Virus record (IMG/VR): IMGVR_UViG_3300050132_000038
Span: 1-64,000 of that record
DNA: 64,000 nucleotides
Reading direction: 5' to 3' (one strand)
The position numbers were made by a program, and so were the translations under genes. The notes below the pieces were generated by a model. That model had not been told where the DNA came from and did no database searches. It saw nothing but the letters and a program-made list of their open reading frames with translations. The stretch's first letter is position 1. Each line of letters opens with the position of its first letter. Positions 3,789 through 50,054 of the stretch are shown here, in pieces.

Positions 3789-3806
3789 ATTAGTAGCCCT
3801 AGTTGA

Positions 3807-4565: not shown

Positions 4566-4648
4566 GATTTATATCCTTAGTTGTGCAGCAACTTTGTTGT
4601 GAAAGAAAGTGTGAAACAGTAGTGAACCTCTACGGGTCGGTACGGCGG

Positions 4649-4867: not shown

Positions 4868-4949
4868 TTCTAATCCTTTAATTTTTTGGTAATGGTACAG
4901 TTCTGCCAGCTAATGAATGTTTAGAATCACTACAGTACTGAATCGTACC

Positions 4950-5558: not shown

Positions 5559-5574
5559 TCTAAACTCCTAGGGT

Positions 5575-6081: not shown

Positions 6082-6103
6082 AATTAACTCCTAGTTATTT
6101 AAT

Positions 6104-6112
6104 ATGAAATTG
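6104..6112 (-). promoter_or_regulatory. Putative late promoter motif CAATTTNAW, upstream of the tail tube
   Basis: One of nine copies upstream of late-region gene starts (see findings). Confidence 0.55.
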
Positions 6113-6116
6113 ATTG

Positions 6117-10681: not shown

Positions 10682-11770
10682 TCAGGCGATTCTGTAGCCC
10701 TTAGCAACCGAGCGACTGTTTGCAACTGCCACAGCGATCGACTCTTGGATGATCCAGCCACGACCGCTGACCTTCTCAACACCTGCGCTAATCGGCTCCG
10801 ACGAAATACCACCGCGATCCGAGTAAGCACCATGGTTCAGTGCATCCGAGATAACGAAGAATTCACCTTGGTTTAGCACCTTGTGTTCTGGGTGACGATA
10901 TGCGTCCGACGTAACGGTACACCCATAGATCACACCGAGTTCACCAGTCAACAGCAACTCGTGACGAGCAACCGGGTCGATTGCGTGGTAGAATTCCGAG
11001 TTACCGATAATGTCGATGTACAGATCGGTTGCCATCAACACGTGCGGCGTTTTCAGGCCCCACTGCGACACGTTCACCATAACTTGGGCAAACGTATACG
11101 GCGTCAGTTGACCCGAGATAATCGACAGCGGATTATCAATACCGACGATAGCATTAACTTGGTTGTACCACAGACGGTCTTCGCCGACCATGATAGCTTC
11201 CGTCGCTTCAACGTATTTCTCTTGAAGCACATCCCCGGCGGACTGGTTCAACTCGTTGGTCGGGATATACGGACGGGTAACGATCTGCAATTCCGGAGGA
11301 GTCAACCAACGGTCGCGCGTGATCTGCGAGTAAACCTTGGTCGGGCCAGTTGCATACGTAGCCGTAACGTTCTTGTTCCGCAACGGGAAACGAGGAATCG
11401 AGCCTTGTTCGACTGGAATCTTCGTCAAATACTTACGCATGAAACCTTGACGGTTTGCGGTAAGGTACAACGACTCAGCCATACGTTCGCCCAGAACGCG
11501 GTGTGCATCCGGATCATTGAAACTTGCTTGAATAAGCTCACGGCCAATCTTAGCGCCTTGTTCCGACGAGGCAAACACTGCATCGCTAACGATCTCGCCA
11601 CGCGAAGCAGCTTCGATAAACTGACGCTGCTTGTTCAACAGGTCTTGTTTAGACGAAGCATTGATTTCGCCACCAGCACCAACTGCGTAACCGTTTGAAC
11701 CCGGAAACTTATATTGGGAAGCTGCAACCATAGGCGTCTTGGCTGCTCGGACTTTGATTTTTTCACGCAT
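10682..11770 (-). CDS. Major capsid protein
   Basis: 362 aa after the protease-scaffold-decoration genes; HK97-like motifs (EAIMVGEDRLW, GELGVIYGCTV..D, GWIIQE..AV..SRSVAKG). Confidence 0.85.
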   Translation of the reverse strand: MREKIKVRAAKTPMVAASQYKFPGSNGYAVGAGGEINASSKQDLLNKQRQFIEAASRGEIVSDAVFASSEQGAKIGRELIQASFNDPDAHRVLGERMAESLYLTANRQGFMRKYLTKIPVEQGSIPRFPLRNKNVTATYATGPTKVYSQITRDRWLTPPELQIVTRPYIPTNELNQSAGDVLQEKYVEATEAIMVGEDRLWYNQVNAIVGIDNPLSIISGQLTPYTFAQVMVNVSQWGLKTPHVLMATDLYIDIIGNSEFYHAIDPVARHELLLTGELGVIYGCTVTSDAYRHPEHKVLNQGEFFVISDALNHGAYSDRGGISSEPISAGVEKVSGRGWIIQESIAVAVANSRSVAKGYRIA

Positions 11771-12561: not shown

Positions 12562-14133
12562 TCACAGGTACGTGAAGAACGGTGCATCGCCATTCAGAAT
12601 AGCCTTAGCAGTCAACGAATGACTGGAAGCCTTAGCCTGAGTACGGGTCTTTTGCAGAGGGCGGCTCAGTGCTGCGTGAACAGTACTGGGGCTCTCGATC
12701 TCGTCTTCAAACTCGTCAGCGAACTCACCGTCGTCTTCTGCTTCAGCGGTGTACATGGCTTGGAAGTCAGGACTTGCCGAGTCACCATACAGGTTCTGGT
12801 CGTCGTCCATACCTTCGTCGCTAGTCATGTCCAGTGCTTCTGCAAACGTGTTACGTGTCGACTCAGGCATTGCTTGCAACTTGGTAGCCAGGGTAACGAT
12901 GGCCTTAGCATATGTAACACCGTGCGAGGCAAACACCGAACGTACCAGCTTCGAGGCACCGCGGACACCAGCTGCAGCCAATTCATCTTCGAGTGCTGCA
13001 CGCAACTCGTTCTTGGTGTCTTTGAAGTACTGACGATTGATACCAACAGCAGCGATAGCCAAGCATTGATCGAGAGCCGAGGTAGCAGCTTGAGAAGTCC
13101 GGCGAACTGCAGCAGTAACACTCTTCACCTTAGCTTCAACACGCTTGTTTAATACTTCGGTGCGACCCACGTTCACGGTAGCTAACGTAAATCCCATGCC
13201 CTTCAGACCAGCACGCAAACCATGTTTAGCCATTTCAACGCCAACTACATCTTGGAATTGATCCGACATATAGTGGTCACCATGACCGGCTTTGATAGCC
13301 TGCTTCTTACCCAGTGATGCGATGATACGGTTAGCCTTGATAGCGTGGACTCGCAGGCCAATCGAAGCAAACACAACATCTTCGCTATCCTTATCGTCCA
13401 TTGCATCAATGTCAACCACCGGCATGTCATCTTCGGTAGCGGCACTGTACTCCTTGCCGTCTTCCTCAGCACCCCAGTCGTCCATATCGCCCTCTTCTTC
13501 CTCGTCCACTGCAGCATTCATACGGCGCGATTCAGGGGTGTCTTCCTCCTCATTCTTGAAATGAGTCGAACCACCTTCGTCGTCATTGTCCGTATCGAGA
13601 AGCGATTGCGGAGTGAAGCCATGCTCAAGTTCATCAGCAGCGTTTACTTCTTCCATACCCTCTTCATCATCTTCCTCTTCTTCGTCGAACTCACCAACGG
13701 TCAGATAACCTTCGGCTGGGTCAACGTCGTTGTCGAGGAACTGCTCATCACCTTCTGCAGAGCCTGCCTTAACACCCGAGTCAGGATCAGCACCCGTGAA
13801 CAGGTCAGGATCAGCTTCAGAGCTCGACATATCCGGATCAGTACCCGAGAACGAATCGGTGTCCACATCAGCGTCGGCCTTGATACGCTTAGCTGCTTGC
13901 GTCTTAGCCACGGGTTTAGCTGAAGCATTCATCCGCCGCGTTTCTTTGGTGTCCTTTTCTTCATTCAAGAAATGGGTGGAGCCCCCTTCTGCTTCATCAG
14001 GGTCGATGAGCAGCATGGAGTCCTGATTGTTCTCAATTGAGAAGCCTGAGTATTCCGGAGCCTTCTTTTCCTCGTTAGGGAAATGCGTGGTCGGGAACTG
14101 GGCCGCCGTGATTTTCTTACGTACAATAGCCAT
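12562..14133 (-). CDS. Prohead scaffold/core-like acidic protein
   Basis: Very D/E-rich with an internal repeat (EGGSTHF.NEE.DT.E.RRMNA twice). Start moved to ATG 14133 (GAGAGGA RBS), downstream of a terminator and the promoter motif. Confidence 0.65.
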   Translation of the reverse strand: MAIVRKKITAAQFPTTHFPNEEKKAPEYSGFSIENNQDSMLLIDPDEAEGGSTHFLNEEKDTKETRRMNASAKPVAKTQAAKRIKADADVDTDSFSGTDPDMSSSEADPDLFTGADPDSGVKAGSAEGDEQFLDNDVDPAEGYLTVGEFDEEEEDDEEGMEEVNAADELEHGFTPQSLLDTDNDDEGGSTHFKNEEEDTPESRRMNAAVDEEEEGDMDDWGAEEDGKEYSAATEDDMPVVDIDAMDDKDSEDVVFASIGLRVHAIKANRIIASLGKKQAIKAGHGDHYMSDQFQDVVGVEMAKHGLRAGLKGMGFTLATVNVGRTEVLNKRVEAKVKSVTAAVRRTSQAATSALDQCLAIAAVGINRQYFKDTKNELRAALEDELAAAGVRGASKLVRSVFASHGVTYAKAIVTLATKLQAMPESTRNTFAEALDMTSDEGMDDDQNLYGDSASPDFQAMYTAEAEDDGEFADEFEDEIESPSTVHAALSRPLQKTRTQAKASSHSLTAKAILNGDAPFFTYL

Positions 14134-15904: not shown

Positions 15905-16723
15905 CTATTCAGAACTAGCGAACTCATGTACCTCATCGGATAGAGCCTGCGCCCAGGCCGGGTCCTTCACTATAGAAACCTCGATCGGGCTGATGCCATG
16001 GGCATTTAAAAAGCTTAAATGGGAGTCACCATTCCAGTCCTTGTGGGTTTTCCAGTTCACATCCTTAATGCTAGAGATGTGCTGACAGCAATACTTAGAA
16101 GTACACTCTGTTCCGCAGTACCCACAAGTAAAGTAATCGACTAGTGCCCCCATAGAGTAGGTGTTGATCTCTTTGGTTAGTACCTTCTGTGCTACGTCAG
16201 GATACTTAGTCTTGTCGATAGCTAAGAGTCCCATCACCTTCCATAGCTTACCATCCCCGTAACCACTTACTTTATGGAAGCTAGCATCGAGGAGAACTCC
16301 GTAGGCCTTCTCGTGATCCTCGTTGTCGTGCTCAAGATGTACAGGGCAACCGGCCCATGCTTTGTAAGCCATACGGGATGTAGGTGGTGGCATGAACCTC
16401 GCTAGTTCCGAGGTCGGAAACGCAATACCGTTCCTATTAGGAAGCTCCGATGGACAGACTACTGTAGAGACGATTATGTAATCGGAAATATTCGGGCTTA
16501 TTTTATAGACTTTAGCCGCAAACGGTAGCCACGTCTCATAGTCCAGCTGAGTAAGGAGCGACTGATCCTTCTCTGCATCCATCACCTTCTCAGTGTGCCC
16601 GATGCTATCAACTACTTTGGTATTGAGAGCATCACCTAAACTAGTGTTAGCACTCAACCTCTTATAGACACCTGCGTCCTCTCGTTTAGCGGATGCCTCC
16701 GCGTATGCTTTTGGGATCCTCAT
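15905..16723 (-). CDS. Prohead maturation protease
   Basis: PNRNG..F, VHLEHDN (catalytic His candidate), YSMG (catalytic Ser candidate), CGYCG zinc ribbon, EVSIVKDPA; lies upstream of scaffold and capsid. Confidence 0.8.
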   Translation of the reverse strand: MRIPKAYAEASAKREDAGVYKRLSANTSLGDALNTKVVDSIGHTEKVMDAEKDQSLLTQLDYETWLPFAAKVYKISPNISDYIIVSTVVCPSELPNRNGIAFPTSELARFMPPPTSRMAYKAWAGCPVHLEHDNEDHEKAYGVLLDASFHKVSGYGDGKLWKVMGLLAIDKTKYPDVAQKVLTKEINTYSMGALVDYFTCGYCGTECTSKYCCQHISSIKDVNWKTHKDWNGDSHLSFLNAHGISPIEVSIVKDPAWAQALSDEVHEFASSE

Positions 16724-16726
16724 AGG

Positions 16727-17023
16727 TTAGCCTTCCCACAAAAATTCTAGCTTAGTAGCTGAAGCAGAGCTCTTCAGTGCCAGGCTCCACTCTCCCTCAT
16801 CCCGCGTTAGCTCTGCGTAGGCGTTATCGTACTCCCAACCAGCAGCCTCTAGAGTTTCAATAACCTTTTCTTTAGGTTCATGCACTATAAAAGCATCGTC
16901 CCCTTGGCGGTCTACGGTGAATCCCTTCGAGGTTAGCGTCCGCATAACTTCGTTCTTTATCTTGTTAGGAACTGCTGCACTAACTTCGACAAGACGGGCT
17001 GCAGCATTCAATTGGATTCTCAT
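16727..17023 (-). CDS. Small protein with LNAAxRL tag
   Basis: MRIQLNAAARLVEVSAA. Confidence 0.7.
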   Translation of the reverse strand: MRIQLNAAARLVEVSAAVPNKIKNEVMRTLTSKGFTVDRQGDDAFIVHEPKEKVIETLEAAGWEYDNAYAELTRDEGEWSLALKSSASATKLEFLWEG

Positions 17024-24320: not shown

Positions 24321-24575
24321 TTACGTTAGGCCAGGGAACGTAATACCAGCAGGCCGTGTCTTCTTTCCCTTGTACTCTACAAGTTCTGGTAAGCGGTACA
24401 TAGATCGCACACCTCCGCCTACGTCTACCATAGCGACTTCTTCTTTACGCGCTACTTTAATATCGAGTACAGTTCCAATATACTCGTCGGGGTTTCGGGC
24501 TTCTGCTACTTTCATTCCAGGCTGTACCTTTGTAGCAGCTAGTAGTCGAGAGGCCGCATTAAGTTGTATCTGCAT
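24321..24575 (-). CDS. Small SH3/KOW-like protein with LNAAxRL tag
   Basis: MQIQLNAASRLLAA, then VQPGMKV..YIGTV. Confidence 0.65.
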   Translation of the reverse strand: MQIQLNAASRLLAATKVQPGMKVAEARNPDEYIGTVLDIKVARKEEVAMVDVGGGVRSMYRLPELVEYKGKKTRPAGITFPGLT

Positions 24576-26510: not shown

Positions 26511-28037
26511 TCAGAATAGCTGACCGTAGCCTCTGCCGTATCTACCCCACATGGTAACAGGAGAGATCGTAATACCCACTGCACCGATAGCGCCGTGCTG
26601 TAGCATAGTCGGATCGGTGGAGCCATCGCCCCCCATCACCCCACGCATTACCAAGTTCTGCTTCAACGCCTTCAGCTCATTGTCCAACCTCGACTGAATC
26701 TTAGAGATAGCAGCATCGAACCCTGCTGTACGATCAATGTCCAAGGTAATAGCAGCACCCTGGAACTGGAATGCCTTCTCTGCTTCTGCCGTTACCTGCG
26801 ATTCCAGAGCAAACATCTCAGCGTGCATCAACCAGTATTCACGGATGACCCCTAAGGCATTGGTGAAGCTGAAGTTGGTGAATACCCCGTACGCACCGTT
26901 GAAAGCATCCGCACCCCGACGCAACCAAGTCATGATCGTTTGGTTAGGGTACAGCATGTCAGGAGTACCATACAGCGTAGTGTTCGCCTTGTTGATCTTC
27001 GACCGTACATCAGTAATAGCTGTCATCATAGATGCATTGATAACGAACAGGTCTGCTGATTCCTGGTAGACGAGCGAGGCTTGTGACGAATACCAATACT
27101 TCCAGATCACAGTGTAGGGGACAAGGGATACCATCAACTGCTGGGTGTCGATGACCCCTGCGTAGTACCAACCATTAGCAGTACGTTCTGAGTTACCAAT
27201 AAGGGACGGGGCTGCTACCTGTACACCGCCAGCCCACAATTCGACGGTGACGTTATCGTACAGCTGATCTAGTACAATCGATAGGTTAGCAGGGCTGCCT
27301 TGCAGTTCAACTGTAGACTGCGTGCCCAAAGGTACCGTATTCAACCCTACTACACGGATGTTCTCGTAGGAGAAGAAAGCATTCTGCGATACCTGACCTT
27401 GCAGTGGATCATTTTGCAGGTTCTGTACCTGCGGGAGTTCTAACGTATATCGAAGTTGATACCGTTGGTTATCTAAGCTAGGTGGTACTGTAGAGGGCAC
27501 TGTGATAACTGCGTTAGCTAGGACTGTGTTAGCCAAACCGTTCGACTGTACCAAATAGTTGTAGGCGTTACCTGCTGCGTACACTGTGCCGTCTGAGGCT
27601 AAGAGTTCCCAGGTTACAAAGCCTCCACGTGGGTCAATAGTAGCAGGGAAGCTAAAGATAGCAGTACCAATTGCTGCCATGCCTGCTTGGATTTCATCAA
27701 CCAGGTCGGTGAACGCCTGCGGATTCTGTGTGGCGTACGGTACAAATAATTCATCCTGAACTGTGACTGCTACCTGAGCTGTGAGCACCCGAGCATTAGT
27801 AGTAGCCAGAATCTGGAAGCCGTAAGCAGTACCAGCAATACCACCGGATAACAGGATCTGCGTTACAGGATTAGCACCTGACTGCAAGACTGCTGTGAGC
27901 GGTGGAGCAGTAGTCGGTGTTACCGCAGTCAATACTATGCTGGTGATCGTTTCACCTGGAGCAAGCATAGACGTTAGGTTTGGTGCGACTAATGTATTCT
28001 CTGTGGGCTGTGCAAAATAGACGAATGTATTGTTCAT
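26511..28037 (-). CDS. Putative virion head/neck structural protein
   Basis: Beta-rich N-terminal domains plus a helical C-terminal domain reminiscent of head-tail adaptors; in the late block. Confidence 0.5.
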   Translation of the reverse strand: MNNTFVYFAQPTENTLVAPNLTSMLAPGETITSIVLTAVTPTTAPPLTAVLQSGANPVTQILLSGGIAGTAYGFQILATTNARVLTAQVAVTVQDELFVPYATQNPQAFTDLVDEIQAGMAAIGTAIFSFPATIDPRGGFVTWELLASDGTVYAAGNAYNYLVQSNGLANTVLANAVITVPSTVPPSLDNQRYQLRYTLELPQVQNLQNDPLQGQVSQNAFFSYENIRVVGLNTVPLGTQSTVELQGSPANLSIVLDQLYDNVTVELWAGGVQVAAPSLIGNSERTANGWYYAGVIDTQQLMVSLVPYTVIWKYWYSSQASLVYQESADLFVINASMMTAITDVRSKINKANTTLYGTPDMLYPNQTIMTWLRRGADAFNGAYGVFTNFSFTNALGVIREYWLMHAEMFALESQVTAEAEKAFQFQGAAITLDIDRTAGFDAAISKIQSRLDNELKALKQNLVMRGVMGGDGSTDPTMLQHGAIGAVGITISPVTMWGRYGRGYGQLF

Positions 28038-28567
28038 GCTTTCACCTTAAAGTAAAAATTCCCTCTAAGTTTATTTATAGGTTTACCTTTTACAATAGGT
28101 ATTGTATCGGTACCCCAAGAGAAATCCACAGGTACCTGAAGATGATCTAGTAGTTCCACTGAATAGTACTTAGATACGGATCTCCAGGTTCTAACTGCCA
28201 TTATACCTATAATGCTTGAACTTTGAAGTTCACCTAGAACATGAATAGCTGCTAGATATAGTACAAGACCTAAATGTCGTCCCCTGTATTCTTCTTCGAT
28301 AAAAACACTGATAACCATGTTGCCTTTGGCCGTCGTAGACAATATTCCAATTATTCTATCTCTATCTTTTAAGAAAAAGTCACGAGAATAAGTCAACTTC
28401 AGGTAGTATAAGGACAAACCTTCTTTTGTGCCAAGTGGTACAGCAGGCTTAGTTTTCAATCGTTTTTCAAGAAACTCTACGTCTCGATCAAATTCTAGTT
28501 GAGTGTAGTTCTCTCGCATCCTAATAGGCATAGACTCTACGAGCCTAGAGGCTGCATTTAATTGCAT
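28034..28567 (-). CDS. GNAT-family acetyltransferase with LNAAxRL tag
   Basis: MQLNAASRLVES; acetyl-CoA motif VFIEEEYRGRHLG..LY; visibly more AT-rich than its neighbours. Confidence 0.72.
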   Translation of the reverse strand: MQLNAASRLVESMPIRMRENYTQLEFDRDVEFLEKRLKTKPAVPLGTKEGLSLYYLKLTYSRDFFLKDRDRIIGILSTTAKGNMVISVFIEEEYRGRHLGLVLYLAAIHVLGELQSSSIIGIMAVRTWRSVSKYYSVELLDHLQVPVDFSWGTDTIPIVKGKPINKLRGNFYFKVKA

Positions 28568-28659
28568 GTCGTTTCACCTGGAGCAAGCATAGGCGTTAGG
28601 TTCGGAGCTACTAATGTGTTTTCTGTTGGCTGTGCGAAGTAGACAAATGTGTTGTTCAT
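28558..28659 (-). pseudogene. Truncated duplicate of the first 30 codons of 26511..28037
   Basis: Translates MNNTFVYFAQPTENTLVAPNLTPMLAPGETTCN*; 28570..28659 vs 27948..28037 differ at 11 of 90 nt. Confidence 0.88.
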
Positions 28660-29378
28660 TTTTCAATTCCCTTCAGGTACTCTGAAACCTTAAGAGGGGT
28701 ATTAGTCTCTGAGACTACGGCTAGTATGTTGTCTCTGCTAACGTGGGACACACCTGGCCCCTGAACCACTACCTCTTTCTGATCGTGGGAAAATGGATCA
28801 TCCAGGACAGTACGTATGAACTTTTTATCTATATAGAACAGAGCTGACGGTGGCGTATGAATAGCTAATATAATTCCGATCTGTTCTAAAGGTGTATCCC
28901 AGGTGACGTTGGCGTACTTCAATGCAACTTTAGGATCTGAGGTCCAGGATGAAAGAACAGCGGGCTCTACTTTCAACGGCTTGCCGTTTAGGATCTTTGT
29001 CAGCGCGGTCTCAGGGATAAGCAACCCTCGATACACTACCTTCGGTAGTGTACTACGGTAGCTTTCTCTAACGACGTGGAAAGCTTTTAGGGCATCCTGC
29101 ATTTGCGCGGAGGTGAATCTACCAGAACCGCCACTTATCCACTGCTGTATAGTATGTGAAACCCATTCAGGGAGGGGTTCAGCTGCAGCTAACAGCCTGT
29201 GTGCGGCGTTCAGCTTGACGCCTGATACTCCTATAGATGGCTGAACTAACGTGTTGTTAATGCCGTTACCCCAGATGTCAGGATCGCCAATTGATAGTTC
29301 CCCATCTGCTATTGGGGCAGTCTCACCTGTTCTGTGCCTAGGTGCGTGCATTGCTTTTGTCTCTTTCATATTAGCCAT
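28656..29378 (-). CDS. ADP-ribosyltransferase-like protein (R-S-E clade) with internal tag
   Basis: VVYRGL, LSSWTSD and DQKEVVV match the R/STS/QxE arrangement; VKLNAAHRLLAA precedes the domain. Confidence 0.65.
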   Translation of the reverse strand: MANMKETKAMHAPRHRTGETAPIADGELSIGDPDIWGNGINNTLVQPSIGVSGVKLNAAHRLLAAAEPLPEWVSHTIQQWISGGSGRFTSAQMQDALKAFHVVRESYRSTLPKVVYRGLLIPETALTKILNGKPLKVEPAVLSSWTSDPKVALKYANVTWDTPLEQIGIILAIHTPPSALFYIDKKFIRTVLDDPFSHDQKEVVVQGPGVSHVSRDNILAVVSETNTPLKVSEYLKGIEK

Positions 29379-29704
29379 AGTACAGACCTTCCTGGCGCTG
29401 TCGTCAGTAGGCGGATAGTCTGTCCCTTCTGTTTCAATTGAACTGTAGTGCCCGCACAGTACATACCACCGTTGACCTGCCGAGGTTCATCTGAGATCCA
29501 TCGAGCTAACGCCAAGGCCATGACGATACGGGGGCTTTCCTCGTACACTAGCAGGGAATTATTTGCGTCATCTGGTGACTCCGCTTCGATACCATAGTTC
29601 GCTAGTAGTTCAATCAGGTGGGTACTCAACATGGCTTGCTCCTCTATAAGGGACGCTACTAGTCGGTGTGCAGCTTTCATATTAATCTCTCTAGTGTTAG
29701 CCAC
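29366..29704 (-). CDS. Hypothetical protein with tag variant
   Basis: EINMKAAHRLVAS near the N-terminus. Confidence 0.6.
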   Translation of the reverse strand: MANTREINMKAAHRLVASLIEEQAMLSTHLIELLANYGIEAESPDDANNSLLVYEESPRIVMALALARWISDEPRQVNGGMYCAGTTVQLKQKGQTIRLLTTAPGRSVLWLI

Positions 29705-29710
29705 TATGCG

Positions 29711-29980
29711 TTAGCCTCGGTCGGTTATGCGAGCCTTGTTACCCTCTTTGGCTACGTGGCACTTGTGCTCACCTTTACTAAACTCACCGGAGCCTGTTGA
29801 CGTCCACCCATCGCTTTTCAACTTGGAGACTACCTCAGAGAGTGTGGCGTCTACCGTGACATAGTTAGCACCCTCTGGGCGATCGTAGGTGAACTGGAGG
29901 CTGTTGATCCAGCCTTCAAAAGGGTCAGCGTGGACCTCGTACATAGAAAGTAATCGAGAAGCAGCATTGAGTTTAAACAT
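29711..29980 (-). CDS. Small protein with LNAAxRL tag
   Basis: MFKLNAASRLLS. Confidence 0.68.
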   Translation of the reverse strand: MFKLNAASRLLSMYEVHADPFEGWINSLQFTYDRPEGANYVTVDATLSEVVSKLKSDGWTSTGSGEFSKGEHKCHVAKEGNKARITDRG

Positions 29981-30021
29981 AGGGAATCCTTAGTAAGTTT
30001 TCAATGCTGCTAAGTATCATG

Positions 30022-31419
30022 CTAGAGCCACAGCTTCTCTTTACCTGTCGGCTGCTCAGCTTTGGTTTCAGGAGCTTCGGAAGGCTTACTTTCTTCTCCG
30101 ATGCCACTGTTCAGAATCAAAAGAACTTTTCGGAGTTGGGCGTTATTTAATCCAAACTTCTGGCCTAGGAATTCAGCATCGTGCACTGAGACCTCTCTAC
30201 CCTTCGCTACGTTGGTCACTGTGAATTCAATTTGCGTGCTAGAGGGCTTCATTCGAATCTTAGCAGTGCGTGAGCTCTTAAACAACCCCTTTACTTCCTG
30301 GTACAGGGCATACGCAACTTCCTTGGCTTGCTCAGGCTCAACACCTTTACGCAGCTTGAACACTAGCTTATCTTCATCTACATCCAGCTTCTGAATGAAA
30401 TCCTTGTAGCTAAACATCTCTGGCTTCAACTCGTTCAGGGGTTTCCGCAGTTGCGTGGACAACGGCACAGTACCGAGCGAGGAGCTGAAGTCTTCTAGAG
30501 CTAAGAGATCAGAGATAGCTTTAACTGCCTCGCCTGCTGAGCCAACCGATTCACCTCCCTCTTTCAGCAGTTGACCCGGGAGTTCGTACTCTGGGTTAAT
30601 CTGAATCGTAGTAGACTCACCAACAACCCATTGCACTGAGATGTACAGGCTAGGCGTTACCTTACCTTCATCGTTAGTAGCGTTAATCAGCATCAGGTAG
30701 TAGGTGAAAACGATCTGGCCTTCAGCAGAAGTCGATACGTAGAGGAACAGATTGGAGTCCTCAAACATAACGTGCTCTTGCACTTCCTGACGAATAACGT
30801 CGATGTACTTCTCGAAGGTCTTCGGCACATGCTTGGCTGCCACTTCATTTAGGAAGCCTAAGACCGTTTTCAACTGCTTAGCAACCTTACCTTTCAACTC
30901 ATGGAGTGCAGCTATAGTAGCTGTATACGCTTCACCACGACGATCCGGGAACTGCATAGAGAGTTGAGCTTCCACTGCTTCTAGGGTACGATGTTTCTCG
31001 TATAGGTCCTCAGAGAGAGAGTACTGCTCTTCCAGCTTCTTAACGTTAGGGACCACCACCTTAGTAAGTTCTGGATCAATCTTACGCTTGAGTCGTGATT
31101 TATTTGACCCACCTTCACCTTCTTTGATGGTGAGTTCCATCTCAGCAGCCTTAACTAGAGTAGCACCAACCCACTCCTTTGGCTTCTTTAGGAAGGCCAA
31201 CTGAGTTTGGTGTACCTTAATAACCTTCTCGTTCTCGTCGATCTCTTCCTTCATAGTATCTAGGAAGCGAGTGACGTCATCGATGTAACGAAACTTCGGT
31301 AGTTCGATCGCGTGGACACGAGTTCGGGCTACTGTTTTGTTCTTAGCTGTTGCTGACTTCTTCGTGGCAGTAATACCCGAGGAAGCGCGGAGGCGAGCGG
31401 CTGCATTAGTCTTGACCAT
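30022..31419 (-). CDS. Putative virion protein with tag variant
   Basis: MVKTNAAARLRAS; preceded by a CAATTTAAT motif. Confidence 0.65.
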   Translation of the reverse strand: MVKTNAAARLRASSGITATKKSATAKNKTVARTRVHAIELPKFRYIDDVTRFLDTMKEEIDENEKVIKVHQTQLAFLKKPKEWVGATLVKAAEMELTIKEGEGGSNKSRLKRKIDPELTKVVVPNVKKLEEQYSLSEDLYEKHRTLEAVEAQLSMQFPDRRGEAYTATIAALHELKGKVAKQLKTVLGFLNEVAAKHVPKTFEKYIDVIRQEVQEHVMFEDSNLFLYVSTSAEGQIVFTYYLMLINATNDEGKVTPSLYISVQWVVGESTTIQINPEYELPGQLLKEGGESVGSAGEAVKAISDLLALEDFSSSLGTVPLSTQLRKPLNELKPEMFSYKDFIQKLDVDEDKLVFKLRKGVEPEQAKEVAYALYQEVKGLFKSSRTAKIRMKPSSTQIEFTVTNVAKGREVSVHDAEFLGQKFGLNNAQLRKVLLILNSGIGEESKPSEAPETKAEQPTGKEKLWL

Positions 31420-33170: not shown

Positions 33171-33740
33171 CTAATCAAAGTGGGTAAGTCTGTACGCCGC
33201 GCTCATCTTCAGAGGGTCGACGCCATTCTTCTTCGCGTTTTCTATTCTGGAGATTTCCATCTCAACTGAGCGCATCGACTGTGGATCAGCTAGCAATGAT
33301 TCTAGCCCAGGGTGTAGGGGATCAGGCCACTCATTATACGGCACCCATACGTTACCTGCGGTTTCCTCAGCGAATTCAGGTGGAGAATTAATCTCGAATT
33401 GCTTAGGAATGACTACGAGATTGTTAGCGTACTGAAATCCGCGGTCTGCATCATAGTACGTCATGAGAGGGAATATCTTCATCTCACCTGTGTATCCTGT
33501 TTCCTCTCTAAGTTCCCGTTTGAGTGCGGTGAACGTTTCCTCGTTACCGTCGATAGAACCTCCCCAACAACCGTACGTGTTTGGCGTATCCGAAGTAGTG
33601 CTACGGAGTTGGAAACTGAAGTTCAGTGTGTCTGCAGCTAGGAGTAGGCAACCAACCGCGTAGTGGTACCCCCTCACCCCAGGGACCCATTCTTCACCAT
33701 CTTTGTGTGCTAGTAGTCGTGTAGCTGCATTTAGTTTCAT
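33171..33740 (-). CDS. Nudix hydrolase with tags at both ends
   Basis: Nudix box GGSIDGNEETFTALKRELREETG; starts MKLNAATRLLA, ends LKMSAAYRLTHFD. Confidence 0.88.
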   Translation of the reverse strand: MKLNAATRLLAHKDGEEWVPGVRGYHYAVGCLLLAADTLNFSFQLRSTTSDTPNTYGCWGGSIDGNEETFTALKRELREETGYTGEMKIFPLMTYYDADRGFQYANNLVVIPKQFEINSPPEFAEETAGNVWVPYNEWPDPLHPGLESLLADPQSMRSVEMEISRIENAKKNGVDPLKMSAAYRLTHFD

Positions 33741-33749
33741 TGTCAGGTC

Positions 33750-34373
33750 CTAAGAAGTCGGGTCCACTATGACAACCTGCCTTCCGCGCATCATGAAGTT
33801 GTCCTTGTGGATGTCCGGGTAGCCATCACCAGTGTTGTACTCAGCTACAAGCCACTCGGCGAATTGTTTTAGATTCGGATCTAAGGGTGCGCCACGCGAA
33901 GTCTTTATCTCACATAGGCGGGTCCACAGCGGACTAACCTTAGACTGGTATACCGAGAGGTTTTTCTGGTGCGGTACAAAGCATATAGTCTCCAGTCCAT
34001 AGATGAACTTCTTGAACTGGGCTTCTGACATAGGAGTCAGTTTCTCCATGAAGACCACGTGAAGTCCTGTCTTATCTGAGTTCCAAATGTGGCCTTTGTA
34101 CTTCGGATCAGGATCCAGACCGTGTTCGTCGTGGTGCTCGCCCTTGATCTTCAATAGATACGGATTGTGGGGATTAGCCTGACAGAACTTCGTATACGAT
34201 TCGAACGCAGGGTCGTGAGTGAACACCTTCACCATCGTCGTCGGATCTGTTAGATGCTGAAAGACAAAGGCGTGAGAGCCCTTTGCTACAGGCTCTATAC
34301 CTTGTGACTTCAAGTCCTTCAGATACTCTGTCAAGGTGACTGCGATTAACCTAGTAGCTGCGTTTAACTTCAT
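33750..34373 (-). CDS. Protein-kinase-like (PKL fold) enzyme with LNAAxRL tag
   Basis: Gly-loop AKGSHAFVF, VKV lysine, FMEKL hinge, DIHKDNFM catalytic loop, IVDP. Confidence 0.78.
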   Translation of the reverse strand: MKLNAATRLIAVTLTEYLKDLKSQGIEPVAKGSHAFVFQHLTDPTTMVKVFTHDPAFESYTKFCQANPHNPYLLKIKGEHHDEHGLDPDPKYKGHIWNSDKTGLHVVFMEKLTPMSEAQFKKFIYGLETICFVPHQKNLSVYQSKVSPLWTRLCEIKTSRGAPLDPNLKQFAEWLVAEYNTGDGYPDIHKDNFMMRGRQVVIVDPTS

Positions 34374-34376: not shown

Positions 34377-35792
34377 CTATTTCCCTACTAAAAAGTTTGT
34401 GAAAGCCCATTCGTTATCTTCATCGAAATCCTTCTTGTACAGGTGCCCTCTGTTATCCAAGGGACTCCAATCTGAATAGTAAGCCACCATAGGACCAAGG
34501 TAGGGTTTAGCTATTGACAGCACAAAGTCGAAGGGTAAGTCTTCTGGCTCACAATAACCCATTCTCGGATTCTCTAACGTCCATACTATAGCCCCTAGCA
34601 GTGAGGCACATACCTGCACAGTAGTTGCATTCTGACCAGGAACTAACGATCGAGCTTCCTCTATATCTAATTGAGAGCCATACCACAGCGCATTCTTACC
34701 ATGACCTAGGAGCAACACCCCTAGTTCATCGATACCACTTAGTATGGAGTTCTTAGCAATCCTAGTATTACGGTGCATCCACAATTCTTGTCCACGCATC
34801 TCATGGATTGAGGCCAATGCTGCATCTGTCGGCTGATACGCATAGTACACTGTAGGTCTATAGGAATCAGTGGATAGATACTCACTGATCGTTACTGCCT
34901 CTGAGTGCTGGATTAGGAATCCGTTATACGTACCACCAAGAGGCACCCAGGACTTCACGAGGGTGGCTACTCCGGGAGTGTCGAGATACGCTGAATTCCC
35001 CTGCACAGTTAAGCCACCAACCTCTTGCGGTTCGTGCGACCCCCAACCTAGTTCAGCAGGTGCTCTACCCTCAGCCCAGAAGCCTTCGCAGCTCCAGGTG
35101 TTAACGAATTCATGTACGCGCTTAGGAACCTTCAGTATCTGTGTATCGCGTTCTGCTATTTGAATCACCTTAGTATCAGTGGCCTCGGCTAGAGCTGCCC
35201 AACCCATTTGGTTCTGTGGAACCTCAGTAGATAATCCGGTATCCTTAGCAATCTTGAGTAATGCAGCTTTTGTGAAATGCGATACTAGCCCAGGGTTAGC
35301 CCCGTGCGTTACTACACAGGTAGCATGACCTGGGTACTTGGAAGCCATCTCCCTAATCTCTTGATGCTCTGTGTACAAAGTACGTTCTGCTAGATCGGGT
35401 ATTGTCTCGTCGGGTGAGGTAGCCCAACGCTCAATGGACGTGTCGATGTACATAACGTTATGGGATAGGCACCACTCTACAATAGCTATTCCATCGATGT
35501 TCAAGCTTAGGTTGACGAGGTAATCACCTTCAGCTAGTAAGGACTCAAGAGTAGAGCCCATGTTGTCTTCTACTATCTCACGCACTACGTAGTGAATGCC
35601 TGTGTAGGGAGCGAATTCAGGGCGCTCTACCTTATCCAAAACAGTTATCTTGGAGGGATTCAGATCTATGTGGCGGAGGAGCATTGGTAACATCGTCTGC
35701 CCTACAGCACCAAAGCCCAAGAGTAAGAGGCGACCATCGTGTGTTGCTAACTTTTGACTAGCTAGTAGTCTGGAGGCTGCGTTAATCTTCAT
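34377..35792 (-). CDS. hss: Homospermidine synthase with N-terminal tag
   Basis: GFGAVG Rossmann motif, HGANPGLVSHF, QIAERDTQ, FVNTWSCEGF, HSEA, YRPTVYYAY, GIDELGVLL, QNATTVQV. Confidence 0.93.
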   Translation of the reverse strand: MKINAASRLLASQKLATHDGRLLLLGFGAVGQTMLPMLLRHIDLNPSKITVLDKVERPEFAPYTGIHYVVREIVEDNMGSTLESLLAEGDYLVNLSLNIDGIAIVEWCLSHNVMYIDTSIERWATSPDETIPDLAERTLYTEHQEIREMASKYPGHATCVVTHGANPGLVSHFTKAALLKIAKDTGLSTEVPQNQMGWAALAEATDTKVIQIAERDTQILKVPKRVHEFVNTWSCEGFWAEGRAPAELGWGSHEPQEVGGLTVQGNSAYLDTPGVATLVKSWVPLGGTYNGFLIQHSEAVTISEYLSTDSYRPTVYYAYQPTDAALASIHEMRGQELWMHRNTRIAKNSILSGIDELGVLLLGHGKNALWYGSQLDIEEARSLVPGQNATTVQVCASLLGAIVWTLENPRMGYCEPEDLPFDFVLSIAKPYLGPMVAYYSDWSPLDNRGHLYKKDFDEDNEWAFTNFLVGK

Positions 35793-36094: not shown

Positions 36095-36307
36095 CTACTT
36101 ACCCAGTAAGCGACGGGCCGCGCTAACCTCTACGTCATCCAAGACAGAGGCGTCCCTCCGGTTTTGGTAAATGTAGTTAGTCAAAGCCCACTTGTTATCA
36201 GGATGCGATTTCTCAGCGTCCTTCTTAGACTTCTCCCAGTCCTTCTCCAATTTCTTCTTAGTACCACGCCCTTCACGGACATCTTTATTGATTAATGCGT
36301 TAGGCAC
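36095..36307 (-). CDS. Small basic protein with C-terminal tag variant
   Basis: Ends VEVSAARRLLGK; AGGAG RBS. Confidence 0.6.
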   Translation of the reverse strand: MPNALINKDVREGRGTKKKLEKDWEKSKKDAEKSHPDNKWALTNYIYQNRRDASVLDDVEVSAARRLLGK

Positions 36308-36344: not shown

Positions 36345-36848
36345 TTATACACGTTTAAGTTGGTGAACACTGAATACTCCGTAGGTAGGAATATCGTCGT
36401 TCACTCCTTCCTTGCCTTCTACAGAGTTAAACCCAGCAGCCTTGAGGATCCTAACTAGCTCAGGTAGTTGCATGTACCACTCCCACACATGCTTATAACC
36501 GGAACCCTTTACCTCTGCTAGTTCGTCCATGAGCTCCATACCCTTTTCTCTAGTGATGTGACCCTCCTGGAATTGCGAGAGTATGCCACGCTTCACCCGA
36601 TCGGTTACATCCTTCAGCTGAACTTCCGTTTGTAGCGTTCGGAAACCAAAGTCGAAGCTATGCCCTATGTCAGCATGAAATTCTAGTACGTGCTGTTCAT
36701 CCTTTGCATACTCTAAGGCGTAGTCTCGATCAGGAGTAATGAAGATGATGTGCTGGTTCTTTGCGTGTTCATCCGACCAGGTTTGAGTTAGGCCTCGGTA
36801 GAAGATTTGACTAGCTAGTAGCCTGTGTGCTGCGTTTAGTTTCATCAT
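36345..36848 (-). CDS. ADP-ribosyltransferase-like protein with LNAAxRL tag
   Basis: MMKLNAAHRLLAS; FYRG..IFITPDRDYALEYA..GFNSV..YGVF..QLK resembles phage ART-like domains. Confidence 0.5.
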   Translation of the reverse strand: MMKLNAAHRLLASQIFYRGLTQTWSDEHAKNQHIIFITPDRDYALEYAKDEQHVLEFHADIGHSFDFGFRTLQTEVQLKDVTDRVKRGILSQFQEGHITREKGMELMDELAEVKGSGYKHVWEWYMQLPELVRILKAAGFNSVEGKEGVNDDIPTYGVFSVHQLKRV

Positions 36849-37780
36849 ACTTCTTCCTTTAGAGCTTTGCTCACTACAGCATCCTCTAATCCTTGCCCTA
36901 TGGATTCTACAAAGTGGCGGAGAACGCTGCCCTCCGGAACTTTCCTTTTACGAATGGCGTTGAGCGCGCTAGTTAAAGCTAGGCTGCCAGCACCAGCAAC
37001 AAGGTGTGCGGCAAACCCACCAGGTAGTGCCGCTATACTCATGCCTAATGCCATCTTCCCTAGGCCCTTGATTGCTTTCTTCTGCTCAGCACTCAACTCT
37101 GTACCCTCACTCAGTGCTACAAGTCCTGTGGTGGCCTGCTTTACCCTAGGGAAGGACCGGTCTAGTACCTTAGCTATGTGTGAGGCCTTAGACTTAATGT
37201 GCTGAGCAATGGCACCCTTCTTAGGTGGTGTCGATACCTCTTCATCAGGTACATCGGCTTTCTCTATACCCTCGGCCACGGAGTCCACGAACACTTCGAG
37301 GTCGTCCTTACCATTGGAATTCTCTTTGTTCTTTTTGAAGTGTTCCGTAGCGTATTTCACTGCGTGAACACCTACGTGACCAGCAGTATGAATAAGGTGT
37401 GCCTGTTCCTTACCTACTGCGAACTTCAATGCTGATTTCAGGACTGTATCCCCGAGCTCCATGAGAACATCCCGATGGTCCTCAGTTAGCTTCTTCCCTG
37501 TGGCAAGATGCTTTAGGGCTGCGGTAGCTCCGGATAACAGTGGGAATGAATCTCGGAGTAGCCTCGCTATCTTAGGGCCGTGGGTTCTTAGGACACCTGC
37601 AGACGCCTTACGGGGCTCAGGTGTATCCTTAGCCTCGGGTTCTTTCGAGTCTTCCTTTATGGAATCCTTAGCATACTTGGAGCCTGGATGATCCTTGATG
37701 TATTGCTTCTTCTGGTCGGCATCAAGAGCTTCCCACCAATCCTCCGAAGCTAACAGTCGATGCGCCGCGTTTAGTTTCAT
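36845..37780 (-). CDS. Tagged protein, paralog A (internal duplication, Gly/Ala-rich hydrophobic segment)
   Basis: MKLNAAHRLLAS; WWEALDADQKKQYIKDHPGSKYA; paralogous to 37777..38808. Confidence 0.72.
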   Translation of the reverse strand: MKLNAAHRLLASEDWWEALDADQKKQYIKDHPGSKYAKDSIKEDSKEPEAKDTPEPRKASAGVLRTHGPKIARLLRDSFPLLSGATAALKHLATGKKLTEDHRDVLMELGDTVLKSALKFAVGKEQAHLIHTAGHVGVHAVKYATEHFKKNKENSNGKDDLEVFVDSVAEGIEKADVPDEEVSTPPKKGAIAQHIKSKASHIAKVLDRSFPRVKQATTGLVALSEGTELSAEQKKAIKGLGKMALGMSIAALPGGFAAHLVAGAGSLALTSALNAIRKRKVPEGSVLRHFVESIGQGLEDAVVSKALKEEV

Positions 37781-38808
37781 CCTTCCCCCTCACCACCAGC
37801 AGTGTGCTCAAGCAAGGCATCTTCCAAGCCTTCGCCAATCGACTCTACGAAGTGGTGGATGATGTGTCCATCTTTGAACTTACCACTCTGTATTAGTTTG
37901 AATGCGTGGGTGATTGCTACTGAGCCAACCCCTGCTGCTAAGTGGGCAGCCAGTCCACCAGGTAGTGCGGCGATACTTAAGCCCAAAGTAATCTTACCCA
38001 GGCTCTTCATTGCGGTTTTCTGTTCATCCGAAAGCTTCTGTCCTTCGCTTAGGGCAACCAAACCTTGGGTAGCAGGCTTGATATGCTGGAAGGACTTATC
38101 CAGCACCTGTGTAATGTGGTGTGCTTTACTCCTGATGTGCCGACCGATAGCAGAACGGTAGCTACTCTTAGGTGCAGCATGCTCTTTAGGAACCGGGGCT
38201 TCCTTAGCTTGCTCTACACCATCGGCTAAAGCCTCGACGAAGACCTCAACGTCATCCTTACCCTCGGACTGTTCCTTCTTCTCTTTGAAGTGTTCCACTG
38301 CGTGGTTAACTGCGGTAATACCAATACGGCCGAGTACCTGAGCACCATGAACACCAACAACAGAGCTAAGAGTAGCTTTGAGGGCTACACCACCGAGGTC
38401 GTATAGTGCTTCCTTGTGGTTTTCCTCTAGGGCCTTACCGGTGGCTAAATGCTTTAGGGCTGAGGTAGCTTCATGGATTAGCGGAAATGTCTTCTTAAGG
38501 AAGCTGGCAATCTTAGGGGCATGTTTACGAATGCCACCTGCAATCTTCTTACGGTGCTCTGGATTAATCTGCGACTTAGCCGCAGGCTCTGTACCCAACT
38601 CCTCTTCATCCTTCTTGGATTTCGATTCCTCGTTAGAGCCCTCTCGAATAGCGTCCTCTGCGTACTTCGAGTGGGGGTGTTCCTCTATGTACTCCTTCTT
38701 CTGGTCGGGCTCTAGATGTTGCCACCACTCACTGGCTGCTGGAGCCTTTGCCTGAGTAATAGTGGATGCTACCAATCGTGCTGCTGCGTTTAGTTTGAAT
38801 TGTTTCAT
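37777..38808 (-). CDS. Tagged protein, paralog B
   Basis: FKLNAAARLVAS; WWQHLEPDQKKEYIEEHPHSKYA; shares SIAALPGG.AAHL.AG and HFVESIG.GLEDA with paralog A. Confidence 0.72.
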   Translation of the reverse strand: MKQFKLNAAARLVASTITQAKAPAASEWWQHLEPDQKKEYIEEHPHSKYAEDAIREGSNEESKSKKDEEELGTEPAAKSQINPEHRKKIAGGIRKHAPKIASFLKKTFPLIHEATSALKHLATGKALEENHKEALYDLGGVALKATLSSVVGVHGAQVLGRIGITAVNHAVEHFKEKKEQSEGKDDVEVFVEALADGVEQAKEAPVPKEHAAPKSSYRSAIGRHIRSKAHHITQVLDKSFQHIKPATQGLVALSEGQKLSDEQKTAMKSLGKITLGLSIAALPGGLAAHLAAGVGSVAITHAFKLIQSGKFKDGHIIHHFVESIGEGLEDALLEHTAGGEGEG

Positions 38809-50052: not shown

Positions 50053-50054
50053 TT

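What the first reader, a model, noticed from the sequence alone, without database searches (positions are those of the whole stretch)
34377..35792. Homospermidine synthase carrying the putative packaging tag
Seen: a complete HSS with MKINAASRLLAS appended before the Rossmann fold, inside the tagged-gene operon. Known: HSS makes sym-homospermidine from putrescine using NAD+, viral HSS genes exist (for example in chloroviruses), and polyamines neutralise packaged DNA. Inference: the enzyme may be loaded into the prohead to make polyamine where DNA is condensed, or be injected to remodel host polyamines. The tag appears grafted onto a gene of cellular origin.
Basis: partly seen in the sequence, partly recalled or inferred. 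Interest (0 to 1): 0.66.

Follow-up and report, generated by a model that had tools for sequence, protein, structure and literature searches.

The report
Cargo-tagged homospermidine synthase in jumbo phage
A complete, apparently active polyamine-making enzyme of a phiRSL1-like jumbo phage starts with the same 12-residue peptide as about 22 other proteins of that phage, most of them encoded among the head genes. The peptide most likely marks it for loading into the virus particle, but this has not been shown.

Summary
Window 34377-35792 (-) encodes a 471-aa bacterial-type homospermidine synthase (HSS) with the Rossmann motif and all eight catalytic residues intact.

Residues 1-12 are a peptide with the core K-[LI]-N-A-A-x-R-L-[LV]-[AE]. 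It recurs, almost always at the N-terminus, in about 23 ORFs of this 218.9-kb phage genome; 2 are expected by chance. Twenty of the 23 lie in one 41-kb block that holds the portal, protease, capsid and sheath genes. All synonymous codons are used, so selection acts on the protein.

Cellular HSS and phiRSL1 HSS lack the peptide. The untagged HSS of related phages starts where the window's tag ends.

The tag is common to the phiRSL1/Motura group and is carried by fast-evolving accessory proteins: a NUDIX hydrolase, a kinase-like protein and a possible ADP-ribosyltransferase. This resembles the T4 capsid-targeting sequence and its internal proteins.

I judge capsid or virion loading of HSS the best explanation (about 0.55). 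It is inferred: no virion proteome was available and the one complex prediction gave no verdict. PBCV-1 offers a precedent, since its HSS is virion-associated. The tag on HSS is not a recent graft: a whole clade of phage HSS shares it. Synthesis of polyamine inside the head for DNA condensation is unsupported.

The parts
34377..35792 (-). Homospermidine synthase CDS, 471 aa, complete
   Evidence: AF2 model has mean pLDDT 86.2 and pTM 0.89.
35757..35792 (-). N-terminal tag, residues 1-12 (M-K-I-N-A-A-S-R-L-L-A-S)
   Evidence: PSSM 29.3 bits. In the model it is a short helix (residues 3-9) with pLDDT about 47, not packed on the fold. It lies outside all HSS homology.
35739..35756 (-). Residues 13-18 (Q-K-L-A-T-H), the native leader of the enzyme
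   Evidence: Untagged HSS of related phages starts M-Q-K-L-A-R-P-x-G-R at this point.
35313..35726 (-). NAD-binding Rossmann domain (residues 23-160)
   Evidence: Pfam PF03435, E 9e-23. G26-x-G28-x-x-G31 present.
34485..35303 (-). Catalytic C-terminal domain (residues 164-436)
   Evidence: Pfam PF16653, E 3e-23. N166, E214, W233, E241, H296, E298, Y317 and D355 conserved.
33750..34373 (-). Tagged 207-aa protein, weakly kinase-like, 3 nt downstream of HSS
   Evidence: Tag scores 28.6 bits. Matches phrog_15752 (T7 0.7-type kinase) at E 3e-6.
33171..33740 (-). Tagged NUDIX hydrolase
   Evidence: Pfam NUDIX E 7e-9. Tag scores 30.9 bits. The tag is kept on the orthologues of phiRSL1, BcepSauron/Saruman and G002.
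36345..36848 (-). Tagged 167-aa protein, possible ADP-ribosyltransferase (lead only)
   Evidence: Tag scores 33.1 bits. Atlas feature score 0.94 to ART-PolyVal/AcrIF11 clusters. Pfam gave nothing and the fold was poor.
36845..38808 (-). Two tagged paralogues (311 and 343 aa) with a second shared motif and Gly/Ala-rich hydrophobic C-terminal parts; their start and stop codons overlap by 4 nt
36095..36307 (-). 70-aa ORF that ends in a tag copy. Together with 29711-29980 it corresponds to one protein of relative G002 that has the tag in the middle
28034..31419 (-). Five further tagged ORFs next to the portal gene: 28034-28567; 28656-29378 (tag at residue 55); 29366-29704; 29711-29980; 30022-31419
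26511..28037 (-). Portal/connector-like protein, untagged
   Evidence: phrog_17327, E 7e-83.
24321..24575 (-). Tagged 84-aa ORF
16727..17023 (-). Tagged 98-aa ORF immediately upstream of the protease gene
15905..16723 (-). Prohead maturation protease, untagged
   Evidence: phrog_18299, E 6e-90. H132, S190 and H215 invariant in 72 homologues.
12562..14133 (-). Acidic 523-aa protein between the protease and capsid genes, a likely scaffold
   Evidence: Position and composition; alignment A2. The scaffold function is inferred.
10682..11770 (-). Major capsid protein, untagged
   Evidence: phrog_2522, E 2e-91. 71-75% identical to phiRSL1 and BcepSauron.
3438..6977 (-). Four further tagged ORFs around the tail tube gene: 3438-3788, 4649-4867, 4950-5558, 6117-6977

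Best explanation
The gene encodes a working NAD-dependent homospermidine synthase to which a clade-specific cargo tag is attached. The tag is a short amphipathic N-terminal helix with the core A-A-x-R-L. It acts like the capsid-targeting sequence of T4 internal proteins: during head assembly it docks its carrier to a component of the prohead interior (scaffold/core, protease or shell). HSS is thereby enclosed with about 20 other accessory proteins, including a NUDIX hydrolase, a kinase-like protein, a possible ADP-ribosyltransferase and small variable proteins. These are probably delivered into the next host with the DNA, so that putrescine is converted to homospermidine from the first moments of infection.

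Shown: the enzyme is intact; the tag is an add-on, shared, selected at the protein level, concentrated in the head module and common to the phiRSL1/Motura group.

Inferred: binding to the prohead, presence in virions, ejection and the timing of action. Because HSS has no Glu between the tag and the Rossmann strand, its tag may stay attached if the protease is Glu-specific like T4 gp21.
For: - The tag occurs in 23 ORFs against about 2 expected, and 20 of the 23 are N-terminal.
- Twenty of the 23 lie in one 41-kb stretch (19% of the circular map) that also holds the portal, protease, scaffold-like, capsid, sheath and tube genes; binomial P = 3e-12.
- Core structural proteins themselves are untagged. 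The carriers are accessory proteins, mostly without orthologues even in phiRSL1 or G002. This matches T4, where a conserved CTS sits on hypervariable internal proteins (PMC9026906).
- Leu and Arg of the tag each use six codons, and orthologues can carry the tag internally. This excludes an RNA-level or start-site signal.
- The tag co-occurs with this head module: it is present in phiRSL1, G002, Motura and 68 IMG/VR loci with capsid identity of 60% or more, and not seen in the head region of an Alexandravirus with 35% capsid identity.
- The carriers include enzymes of the kind that T4 packages (Alt).
- In the HSS model the tag is a free, low-confidence helix outside the fold.
- Precedent: PBCV-1 HSS is virion-associated (PMC7019647).
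- In an unrelated phage contig (G307), HSS and a NUDIX hydrolase again share that lineage's own N-terminal motif: 7 of 70 ORFs against 0 of 366 in a phage of equal GC content.
Against: - There is no protein-level evidence that any tagged protein is in a virion. The phiRSL1 virion proteome paper was not held.
- No receptor was identified. The one complex prediction scored 0.00, which counts as no verdict.
- Only 5 of about 22 tags are followed by the T4-like L-x-E site, and HSS has none.
- HSS works untagged in phiRSL1 (PMC9992855) and is untagged in Motura and in a class of related phages that do have the tag system. Packaging is therefore not needed for its basic role.
- The position of HSS among tagged genes is partly inherited synteny: topoisomerase IB, NUDIX and HSS are also neighbours in phiRSL1.
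- Bacterial HSS is a dimer of about 104 kDa, a bulky cargo to eject through a tail.
Confidence: 0.55

Rival explanations
1. The tag is a sorting or regulatory signal that has nothing to do with the virion. It could be a docking motif for a phage or host factor, serving timed proteolysis, membrane localisation or recruitment to an assembly or replication site. HSS then acts in the cytoplasm as an ordinary auxiliary metabolic enzyme.
For: - Untagged HSS orthologues exist in phages that have the tag system.
- Three tagged ORFs lie far from the head module, at 87.7, 164.9 and 183.9 kb.
- No virion evidence and no predicted receptor were obtained.
Against: - Tagged genes are strongly clustered with the portal, protease and capsid genes.
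- The tag co-distributes with this head module across relatives.
- The carrier set looks like injected effectors, and the conserved polar N and R argue against simple lipid binding.
Confidence: 0.25
2. The motif is mainly a recognition or cleavage site of the prohead protease (or of the neighbouring SprT-like protease). It would act as a maturation or activation signal rather than a targeting signal, and HSS would carry it as a propeptide.
For: - Five tags end in R-L-x-E, which fits the L/I-x-E rule of T4-type proteases.
- The motif can be internal in some proteins.
- The related phage PaBG shows multiple proteolytic processing of virion proteins (PMC7412058).
Against: - HSS and many other carriers have no Glu near the tag.
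- Capsid, scaffold-like and protease proteins score below 8 bits with the tag matrix.
- The strong preference for the extreme N-terminus is not expected of a mere cleavage site. This reading also overlaps with the main one, because a substrate of the prohead protease must be inside the prohead.
Confidence: 0.12
3. The shared N-terminus is a by-product without function. It could be a recombination joint of shuffled gene cassettes, a translation-initiation optimum, or a wrongly called start.
For: - Gene pieces are indeed rearranged at the tag: 36095-36307 plus 29711-29980 correspond to one gene in G002.
Against: - Nucleotides are not conserved while the residues are; Leu and Arg each use all six codons.
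- The motif is kept across phages whose capsid proteins are only 60% identical.
- No alternative start would leave the Rossmann fold intact.
Confidence: 0.04

Closest known systems
T4 capsid-targeting sequence (CTS) on internal proteins IPI-III, and the packaged ADP-ribosyltransferase Alt
   Same: Both are short N-terminal peptides shared by otherwise unrelated, fast-evolving accessory proteins that are encoded near the head genes. The carriers include enzymes. A prohead protease gene and an acidic scaffold-like gene are present. Some tags end in L-x-E (PMC9026906).
   Different: There is no sequence similarity to the T4 CTS. Far more carriers are involved (about 23, against 3-4 in T4). The motif can be internal. 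Many carriers, HSS among them, lack a Glu cleavage site. Targeting has been demonstrated for T4 and has not been tested here.
phiRSL1 ORF110 homospermidine synthase (biochemically validated)
   Same: 62% identity over residues 19-469. The gene neighbourhood is the same: topoisomerase IB, NUDIX, HSS and the head genes (PMC9992855).
   Different: phiRSL1 HSS has a different, unique N-terminus and no tag, although its NUDIX neighbour is tagged.
PBCV-1 (chlorovirus) homospermidine synthase
   Same: It is a virus-encoded functional HSS that is reported as virion-associated (PMC7019647).
   Different: It belongs to a eukaryotic giant virus with an internal membrane. No targeting peptide is known for it. 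Virion association has been measured there and is only inferred here.
Achromobacter phage Motura HSS
   Same: It is encoded by a phage of the same wider group, which uses the same tag on at least 14 head-module proteins.
   Different: It is only 33% identical and untagged. It sits in a metabolic cluster with a glutathionylspermidine synthase and a transporter substrate-binding domain gene, so it is a separate acquisition used as a plain metabolic gene.
Encapsulin cargo-loading peptides; propeptides of phiKZ/SPN3US head proteins
   Same: In both cases short terminal peptides or propeptides bring diverse proteins, enzymes included, inside an HK97-fold shell.
   Different: Encapsulin peptides are mostly C-terminal and bind the shell directly. 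phiKZ-type propeptides are long and are removed after S/A/G-x-E. Neither shows the A-A-x-R-L motif. The binding partner here is unknown.

Membership tests
Bacterial-type homospermidine synthase (EC 2.5.1.44) | Saccharopine-dehydrogenase-like two-domain architecture with an N-terminal NAD Rossmann fold | tested here: met
   PF03435 and PF16653 score above their cut-offs. G-x-G-x-x-G at residues 26-31. AF2 model pTM 0.89.
Bacterial-type homospermidine synthase (EC 2.5.1.44) | Catalytic and substrate-binding residues of BvHSS: N162, E210, W229, E237, H296, E298, Y323, D361 | tested here: met
   The equivalents N166, E214, W233, E241, H296, E298, Y317 and D355 are present, and invariant in 46 homologues (residue list from PMC4725965).
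Bacterial-type homospermidine synthase (EC 2.5.1.44) | Close similarity to enzymes with proven activity | tested here: met
   62% identical to phiRSL1 HSS. E 1e-114 to Legionella HSS 2ph5 and E 3e-106 to BvHSS 4plp.
Bacterial-type homospermidine synthase (EC 2.5.1.44) | Formation of sym-homospermidine from putrescine | not testable with these tools
   Needs expression and LC-MS of polyamines.
T4-type capsid-targeting sequence system | A short N-terminal peptide shared by several otherwise unrelated proteins of one phage | tested here: met
   23 ORFs against 2 expected; 20 of them N-terminal.
T4-type capsid-targeting sequence system | Carriers are non-essential, fast-evolving head-internal proteins encoded with the head genes | tested here: inconclusive
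   The clustering with head genes and the lack of orthologues were shown. A location inside the head was not shown.
T4-type capsid-targeting sequence system | The peptide is removed by the prohead protease at a consensus Glu site | tested here: inconclusive
   A protease gene is present. R-L-x-E follows 5 of about 22 tags. HSS has no Glu before residue 56.
T4-type capsid-targeting sequence system | The peptide is sufficient to bring a foreign protein into the prohead | not testable with these tools
   Needs a reporter fusion in a cultured relative. The complex prediction gave no verdict.
T4-type capsid-targeting sequence system | Sequence relatedness to the T4 CTS | tested here: not met
   By eye, the core A-A-x-R-L motif shows no resemblance to the T4 CTS as I recall it (own knowledge; the held review, does not print it). 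The system is therefore analogous to the T4 family and is not a member of it.
Virion-associated viral HSS (as in PBCV-1) | HSS detected in purified particles | not testable with these tools
   Literature precedent only.

The most novel reading that the evidence does not exclude
phiRSL1/Motura-group jumbo phages have a previously undescribed, modular cargo-loading system. An N-terminal A-A-x-R-L helix would load more than 20 interchangeable proteins into the head, among them metabolic and signalling enzymes. HSS would be one such cargo: a phage would ship a polyamine synthase inside its particle, convergently with chlorovirus PBCV-1 and possibly with other phage lineages in which HSS and a NUDIX hydrolase share a different N-terminal motif. 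The host polyamine pool would then be rewired before any phage gene is expressed, or homospermidine would be made inside the prohead.
Probability: 0.45. Interest if true: 0.78.

Novelty: new variant of a known kind. Interest (0 to 1): 0.62.

Why it matters
If the tag loads cargo, it gives a simple sequence rule for reading the injected-protein repertoire of a whole group of jumbo phages from genomes alone. Many of these phages are known only from metagenomes.

It would also add a biosynthetic enzyme of small-molecule metabolism to the proteins that phages deliver with their DNA. This links two old observations, that polyamines are needed for phage growth and that HSS is found in PBCV-1 particles.

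The hypothesis is directly testable in cultured relatives (phiRSL1, Motura, BcepSauron). A 12-residue portable tag could also serve for packaging foreign proteins in phage heads, as the T4 CTS does.

Tried and rejected
[quoted passage not shown] The score was 0.00, which is no verdict, so it is not used for or against binding.
- **Possible ADP-ribosyltransferase (36345-36848).** The single-sequence fold had pLDDT 42 and was unusable. Pfam gave nothing even at E = 5. Only the Atlas feature lead remains.
- **Weak tag-like stretches** at the N-termini of the capsid and scaffold-like proteins. All score below 8 bits with the tag matrix, so they are not counted.
- **Other N-terminal classes of phage HSS.** The phiRSL1 type and a T4-CTS-like type with F-x-x-F were tested as possible tags. 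In phiRSL1 and in the 236-kb contig G003 the HSS N-terminus matches no other ORF, so this is not supported there.
- **Virion proteome of phiRSL1** (Yamada 2010): the paper is not held. Effantin 2013 was sought by search only and not found. Reviews and papers on related phages do not mention the tag or virion HSS.
- **Scan of the species genome collection with HSS:** only 2 loci were found because it works by patterns. It was replaced by a search of 301 genomes of one bacterial class.
- **Megablast of 14 kb of the window against phage records:** no match.
- **Promoter and terminator scan of 27.5-42 kb:** nothing above chance except one strong hairpin at 40528-40561, at the start of the topoisomerase IB ORF.
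- **Head region of an Erwinia Alexandravirus:** no tag, so published proteomes of that sister group cannot be used.

Full report
**What the window is.** The window is the first 64 kb of a 218,861-bp IMG/VR phage record rated 100% complete. Its ends overlap by 127 identical bases, so the map is circular. GC content is about 48%.

The capsid protein is 71-75% identical to those of Ralstonia phage phiRSL1 and Burkholderia phages BcepSauron/Saruman, and 60% identical to that of Achromobacter phage Motura. Gene order around the finding matches phiRSL1: topoisomerase IB, NUDIX hydrolase, HSS, then a conserved 409-aa protein, the portal-like gene, a 1,525-aa SNF2 helicase, the protease, a scaffold-like protein, the capsid protein and the sheath. 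Nearly all genes from about 40.5 kb down to 3.4 kb lie on the minus strand.

**The enzyme.**
- ORF 34377-35792 (-) is 471 aa long.
- It has both Pfam domains of the saccharopine-dehydrogenase-like HSS family.
- It matches solved HSS structures at E 1e-114 (Legionella, 2ph5) and E 3e-106 (Blastochloris, 4plp).
- It is 62% identical to the biochemically validated phiRSL1 HSS (PMC9992855).
- The Rossmann glycines and the equivalents of all eight residues named as catalytic or substrate-binding in BvHSS are present. They are invariant in an alignment of 46 homologues.
- An AlphaFold2 model built on that alignment is confident (pLDDT 86, pTM 0.89), except for the first ten residues (pLDDT 47). These form a short helix, residues 3-9, that is not packed on the fold.

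I therefore treat it as a functional HSS. Activity itself was not testable.

**The tag is real.** A simple pattern search found the motif at the start of 15 ORFs in the window, all on the minus strand, and more in the whole genome.
- An unbiased all-against-all comparison of the first 18 residues of 361 ORFs gave one large cluster, which is this family.
- A position matrix built from 19 copies gave 23 hits of 8 bits or more, against a mean of 2.0 (maximum 5) in shuffled proteomes.
- Twenty-one hits score above 22 bits and 20 start within the first eight residues. HSS scores 29.3 bits.
- Twenty of the 23 lie in one 41-kb stretch of the circular map, from 216.5 kb through the origin to 38.8 kb (P = 3e-12). 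This stretch contains the portal, protease, scaffold-like, capsid, sheath and tube genes.
- The core structural proteins do not carry the tag.
- The invariant Leu and Arg each use six different codons and Ala uses four, so the conservation is at the protein level.

**The tag is an addition to HSS.** Homology with cellular and phiRSL1 HSS starts at residue 19.
- In 301 genomes of one bacterial class, 14 genomes (15 loci) encode HSS. Their leaders before the Rossmann strand are short and unrelated. The tag matrix scored at most -0.2 bits for the 14 loci scored; the fifteenth was read by eye and shows no tag.
- Among the 120 best hits of the 5.8-billion-protein word search, nearly all unnamed metagenomic proteins and several shown to lie on phage contigs, one group of eight starts M-Q-K-L-A-R-P-x-G-R.
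- One member of that group sits in a contig with phiRSL1-like gene order, and a neighbouring gene there is tagged.
- The window protein reads tag, then Q-K-L-A-T-H-D-G-R. It is exactly that type of HSS with 12 residues put in front.

**History of the tag on HSS.** A maximum-likelihood tree of 119 HSS sequences was built with the N-terminal columns removed.
- The window protein falls in a clade of 11 sequences that all carry the tag (SH-aLRT 99).
- In the wider clade of 30 sequences that includes phiRSL1, 15 are tagged. Eight form the bare M-Q-K-L group. Five, with one unclassed row, form the phiRSL1 subgroup, in which a different N-terminus precedes an otherwise shared T-K-Y-H-K-P-E-G leader.
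- A second tagged clade of five lies elsewhere in the tree.
- At least four gains or losses are needed. The tree is unrooted, so their order is not settled.
- The tag on HSS is therefore old and labile within phages. It is not a fresh graft in this genome.
- Motura has a distant HSS (33% identity) without any leader, placed beside a glutathionylspermidine synthase and a transporter substrate-binding domain gene.

**The tag system across relatives.**
- phiRSL1 has only a handful of copies, with the core A-A-V-Q-R-L. They are on NUDIX ORF109, internally in ORF112, ORF117 and ORF141, and on one further ORF.
- A 230-kb IMG/VR relative (G002) has about 13 copies, including on HSS and NUDIX.
- Motura has at least 14, with its own flavour (I-Q-A-x-x-R-L-x-A), packed around the portal gene.
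- In 68 IMG/VR loci centred on related capsid genes, 44 distinct ORFs score 12 bits or more, many of them directly beside the protease gene.
- The head region of an Erwinia Alexandravirus (35% capsid identity) shows none.
- Most tagged genes of the window have no detectable orthologue in phiRSL1 or G002.
- One gene of G002 with an internal tag corresponds to two separate window ORFs. One ends with the tag and the other begins with it.

**What the carriers are.**
- A NUDIX hydrolase.
- A protein weakly like the T7 0.7 kinase.
- A weak GNAT-like protein.
- A 167-aa protein whose language-model features resemble ART-PolyVal/AcrIF11 ADP-ribosyltransferases. This is a lead only.
- Two paralogues with Gly/Ala-rich hydrophobic C-terminal parts.
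- Many small proteins of unknown function.

Five carriers share a second motif, W-W-x-x-L ... H-P-x-S-K-Y-A, right after the tag.

**Interpretation.** The pattern closely parallels the T4 capsid-targeting sequence. That is a 10-19-residue N-terminal peptide on hypervariable internal proteins. It gives them affinity for the prohead core, is cut off by gp21, and can carry foreign proteins into the head and on into the host. The enzyme Alt is packaged alongside them (PMC9026906).

I therefore consider loading of HSS into the prohead and virion the best explanation, at about 0.55. The steps from sharing a head-module tag to being in the virion are inferred. I found no accessible virion proteome for this group. 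The only complex prediction gave no verdict.

Cleavage is uncertain. Five tags are followed by L-x-E, but HSS has no Glu before residue 56. If the protease is Glu-specific, HSS would keep its tag.

**What HSS would do.** Delivery with the DNA, to convert host putrescine early in infection, seems more likely than making counter-ions for packaged DNA. PBCV-1 HSS is virion-associated, yet virion polyamines there neutralise only about 0.2% of the DNA phosphate (PMC7019647). Untagged HSS in sister phages shows that the enzyme is also useful as an ordinary expressed gene. Synthesis inside the head is not excluded, but nothing supports it.

**A possible generalisation (partly followed).** In a 52-kb fragment of an unrelated phage (G307, 36% GC), 7 of 70 ORFs begin M-[KR]-[LIV]-x-[DE]-[ILV]. 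The count is 0 of 366 in another HSS-bearing phage of the same GC content and 1 of 361 in the window genome. The seven include HSS and, again, a NUDIX hydrolase. In contig G308, HSS and the next two genes share a similar start. HSS and NUDIX may therefore be recurrent members of tagged sets in several phage lineages. These contigs are fragments and I did not test this further.

**Novelty.** HSS in phiRSL1-type phages and CTS-type targeting are both known. The A-A-x-R-L tag family, its size, and its presence on a polyamine synthase were not found in any paper of the held library. I rate this as a new variant of a known kind.

Noticed in passing
window 1-3375 (-), continuing over the record's end: A three-gene molybdenum hydroxylase set (xanthine dehydrogenase/CO dehydrogenase type) lies inside the phage, flanked by tagged genes. 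It comprises the molybdopterin-binding large subunit (cut by the window start), an FAD subunit (1918-2892) and a 2Fe-2S subunit (2893-3375) (Pfam). This is unusual cargo for a phage.
   Followed up: partly
window 3438-3788, 4950-5558, 36845-37780, 37777-38808; genome 217966-218457: A second conserved motif, W-W-x-x-L-x-x-D-Q-K-x-x-Y-I-x-x-H-P-x-S-K-Y-A, follows the tag directly in five tagged proteins. No Pfam or PHROG family matches it.
   Followed up: no
window 36345-36848 (-): The language-model features of this tagged 167-aa protein resemble ART-PolyVal/AcrIF11 ADP-ribosyltransferase clusters (score 0.94). It would be an analogue of T4 Alt. Pfam gave nothing and the single-sequence fold failed.
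   Followed up: partly
window 14268-15896 (-): A 542-aa protein with a SprT-like metalloprotease domain sits between the prohead protease and the scaffold-like gene. Motura has a SprT-like gene in its head module too.
   Followed up: no
window 17916-22493 (-): A 1,525-aa SNF2-type helicase lies in the middle of the head module and is conserved in phiRSL1 (ORF129) and Motura. Its position is reminiscent of head-packaged helicase proteins such as P1 DarB (from my own knowledge, not tested).
   Followed up: no
window 36095-36307 and 29711-29980; G002 224640-225095: One gene of a relative, with the tag in the middle, corresponds to two separate ORFs here. One ends with the tag and the other starts with it. 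The tag may act as a module boundary in gene shuffling.
   Followed up: partly
window 47480-48880 and 48952-50058 (-): By the look of their N-termini and by synteny with phiRSL1 ORF106 and ORF104, these encode nicotinate phosphoribosyltransferase-like and NadR/NMN adenylyltransferase-like proteins. That would be NAD salvage in a phage whose HSS needs bound NAD. No family scan was run.
   Followed up: no
window 40528-40561: A strong hairpin with 14-15 base pairs, followed on the minus strand by a T-rich tail, overlaps the first codons of the long topoisomerase IB ORF. It is probably the terminator of the upstream unit, in which case the real topoisomerase start lies further downstream.
   Followed up: no
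L187-L189 (contig G307) and L190-L192 (contig G308): In other HSS-bearing phage fragments, HSS shares a different N-terminal motif with other ORFs. In G307 the motif M-K-L-x-E-I type begins 7 of 70 ORFs, including a NUDIX hydrolase. In G308, HSS and the two following genes share a similar start.
   Followed up: partly
window 12562-14133 (-): The acidic scaffold-like protein has three copies of a conserved S-T-H-F-x-N-E-E motif (G-G precedes it in two copies) in its disordered N-terminal half. The motif is conserved in 38 relatives. Its function is unknown.
   Followed up: no
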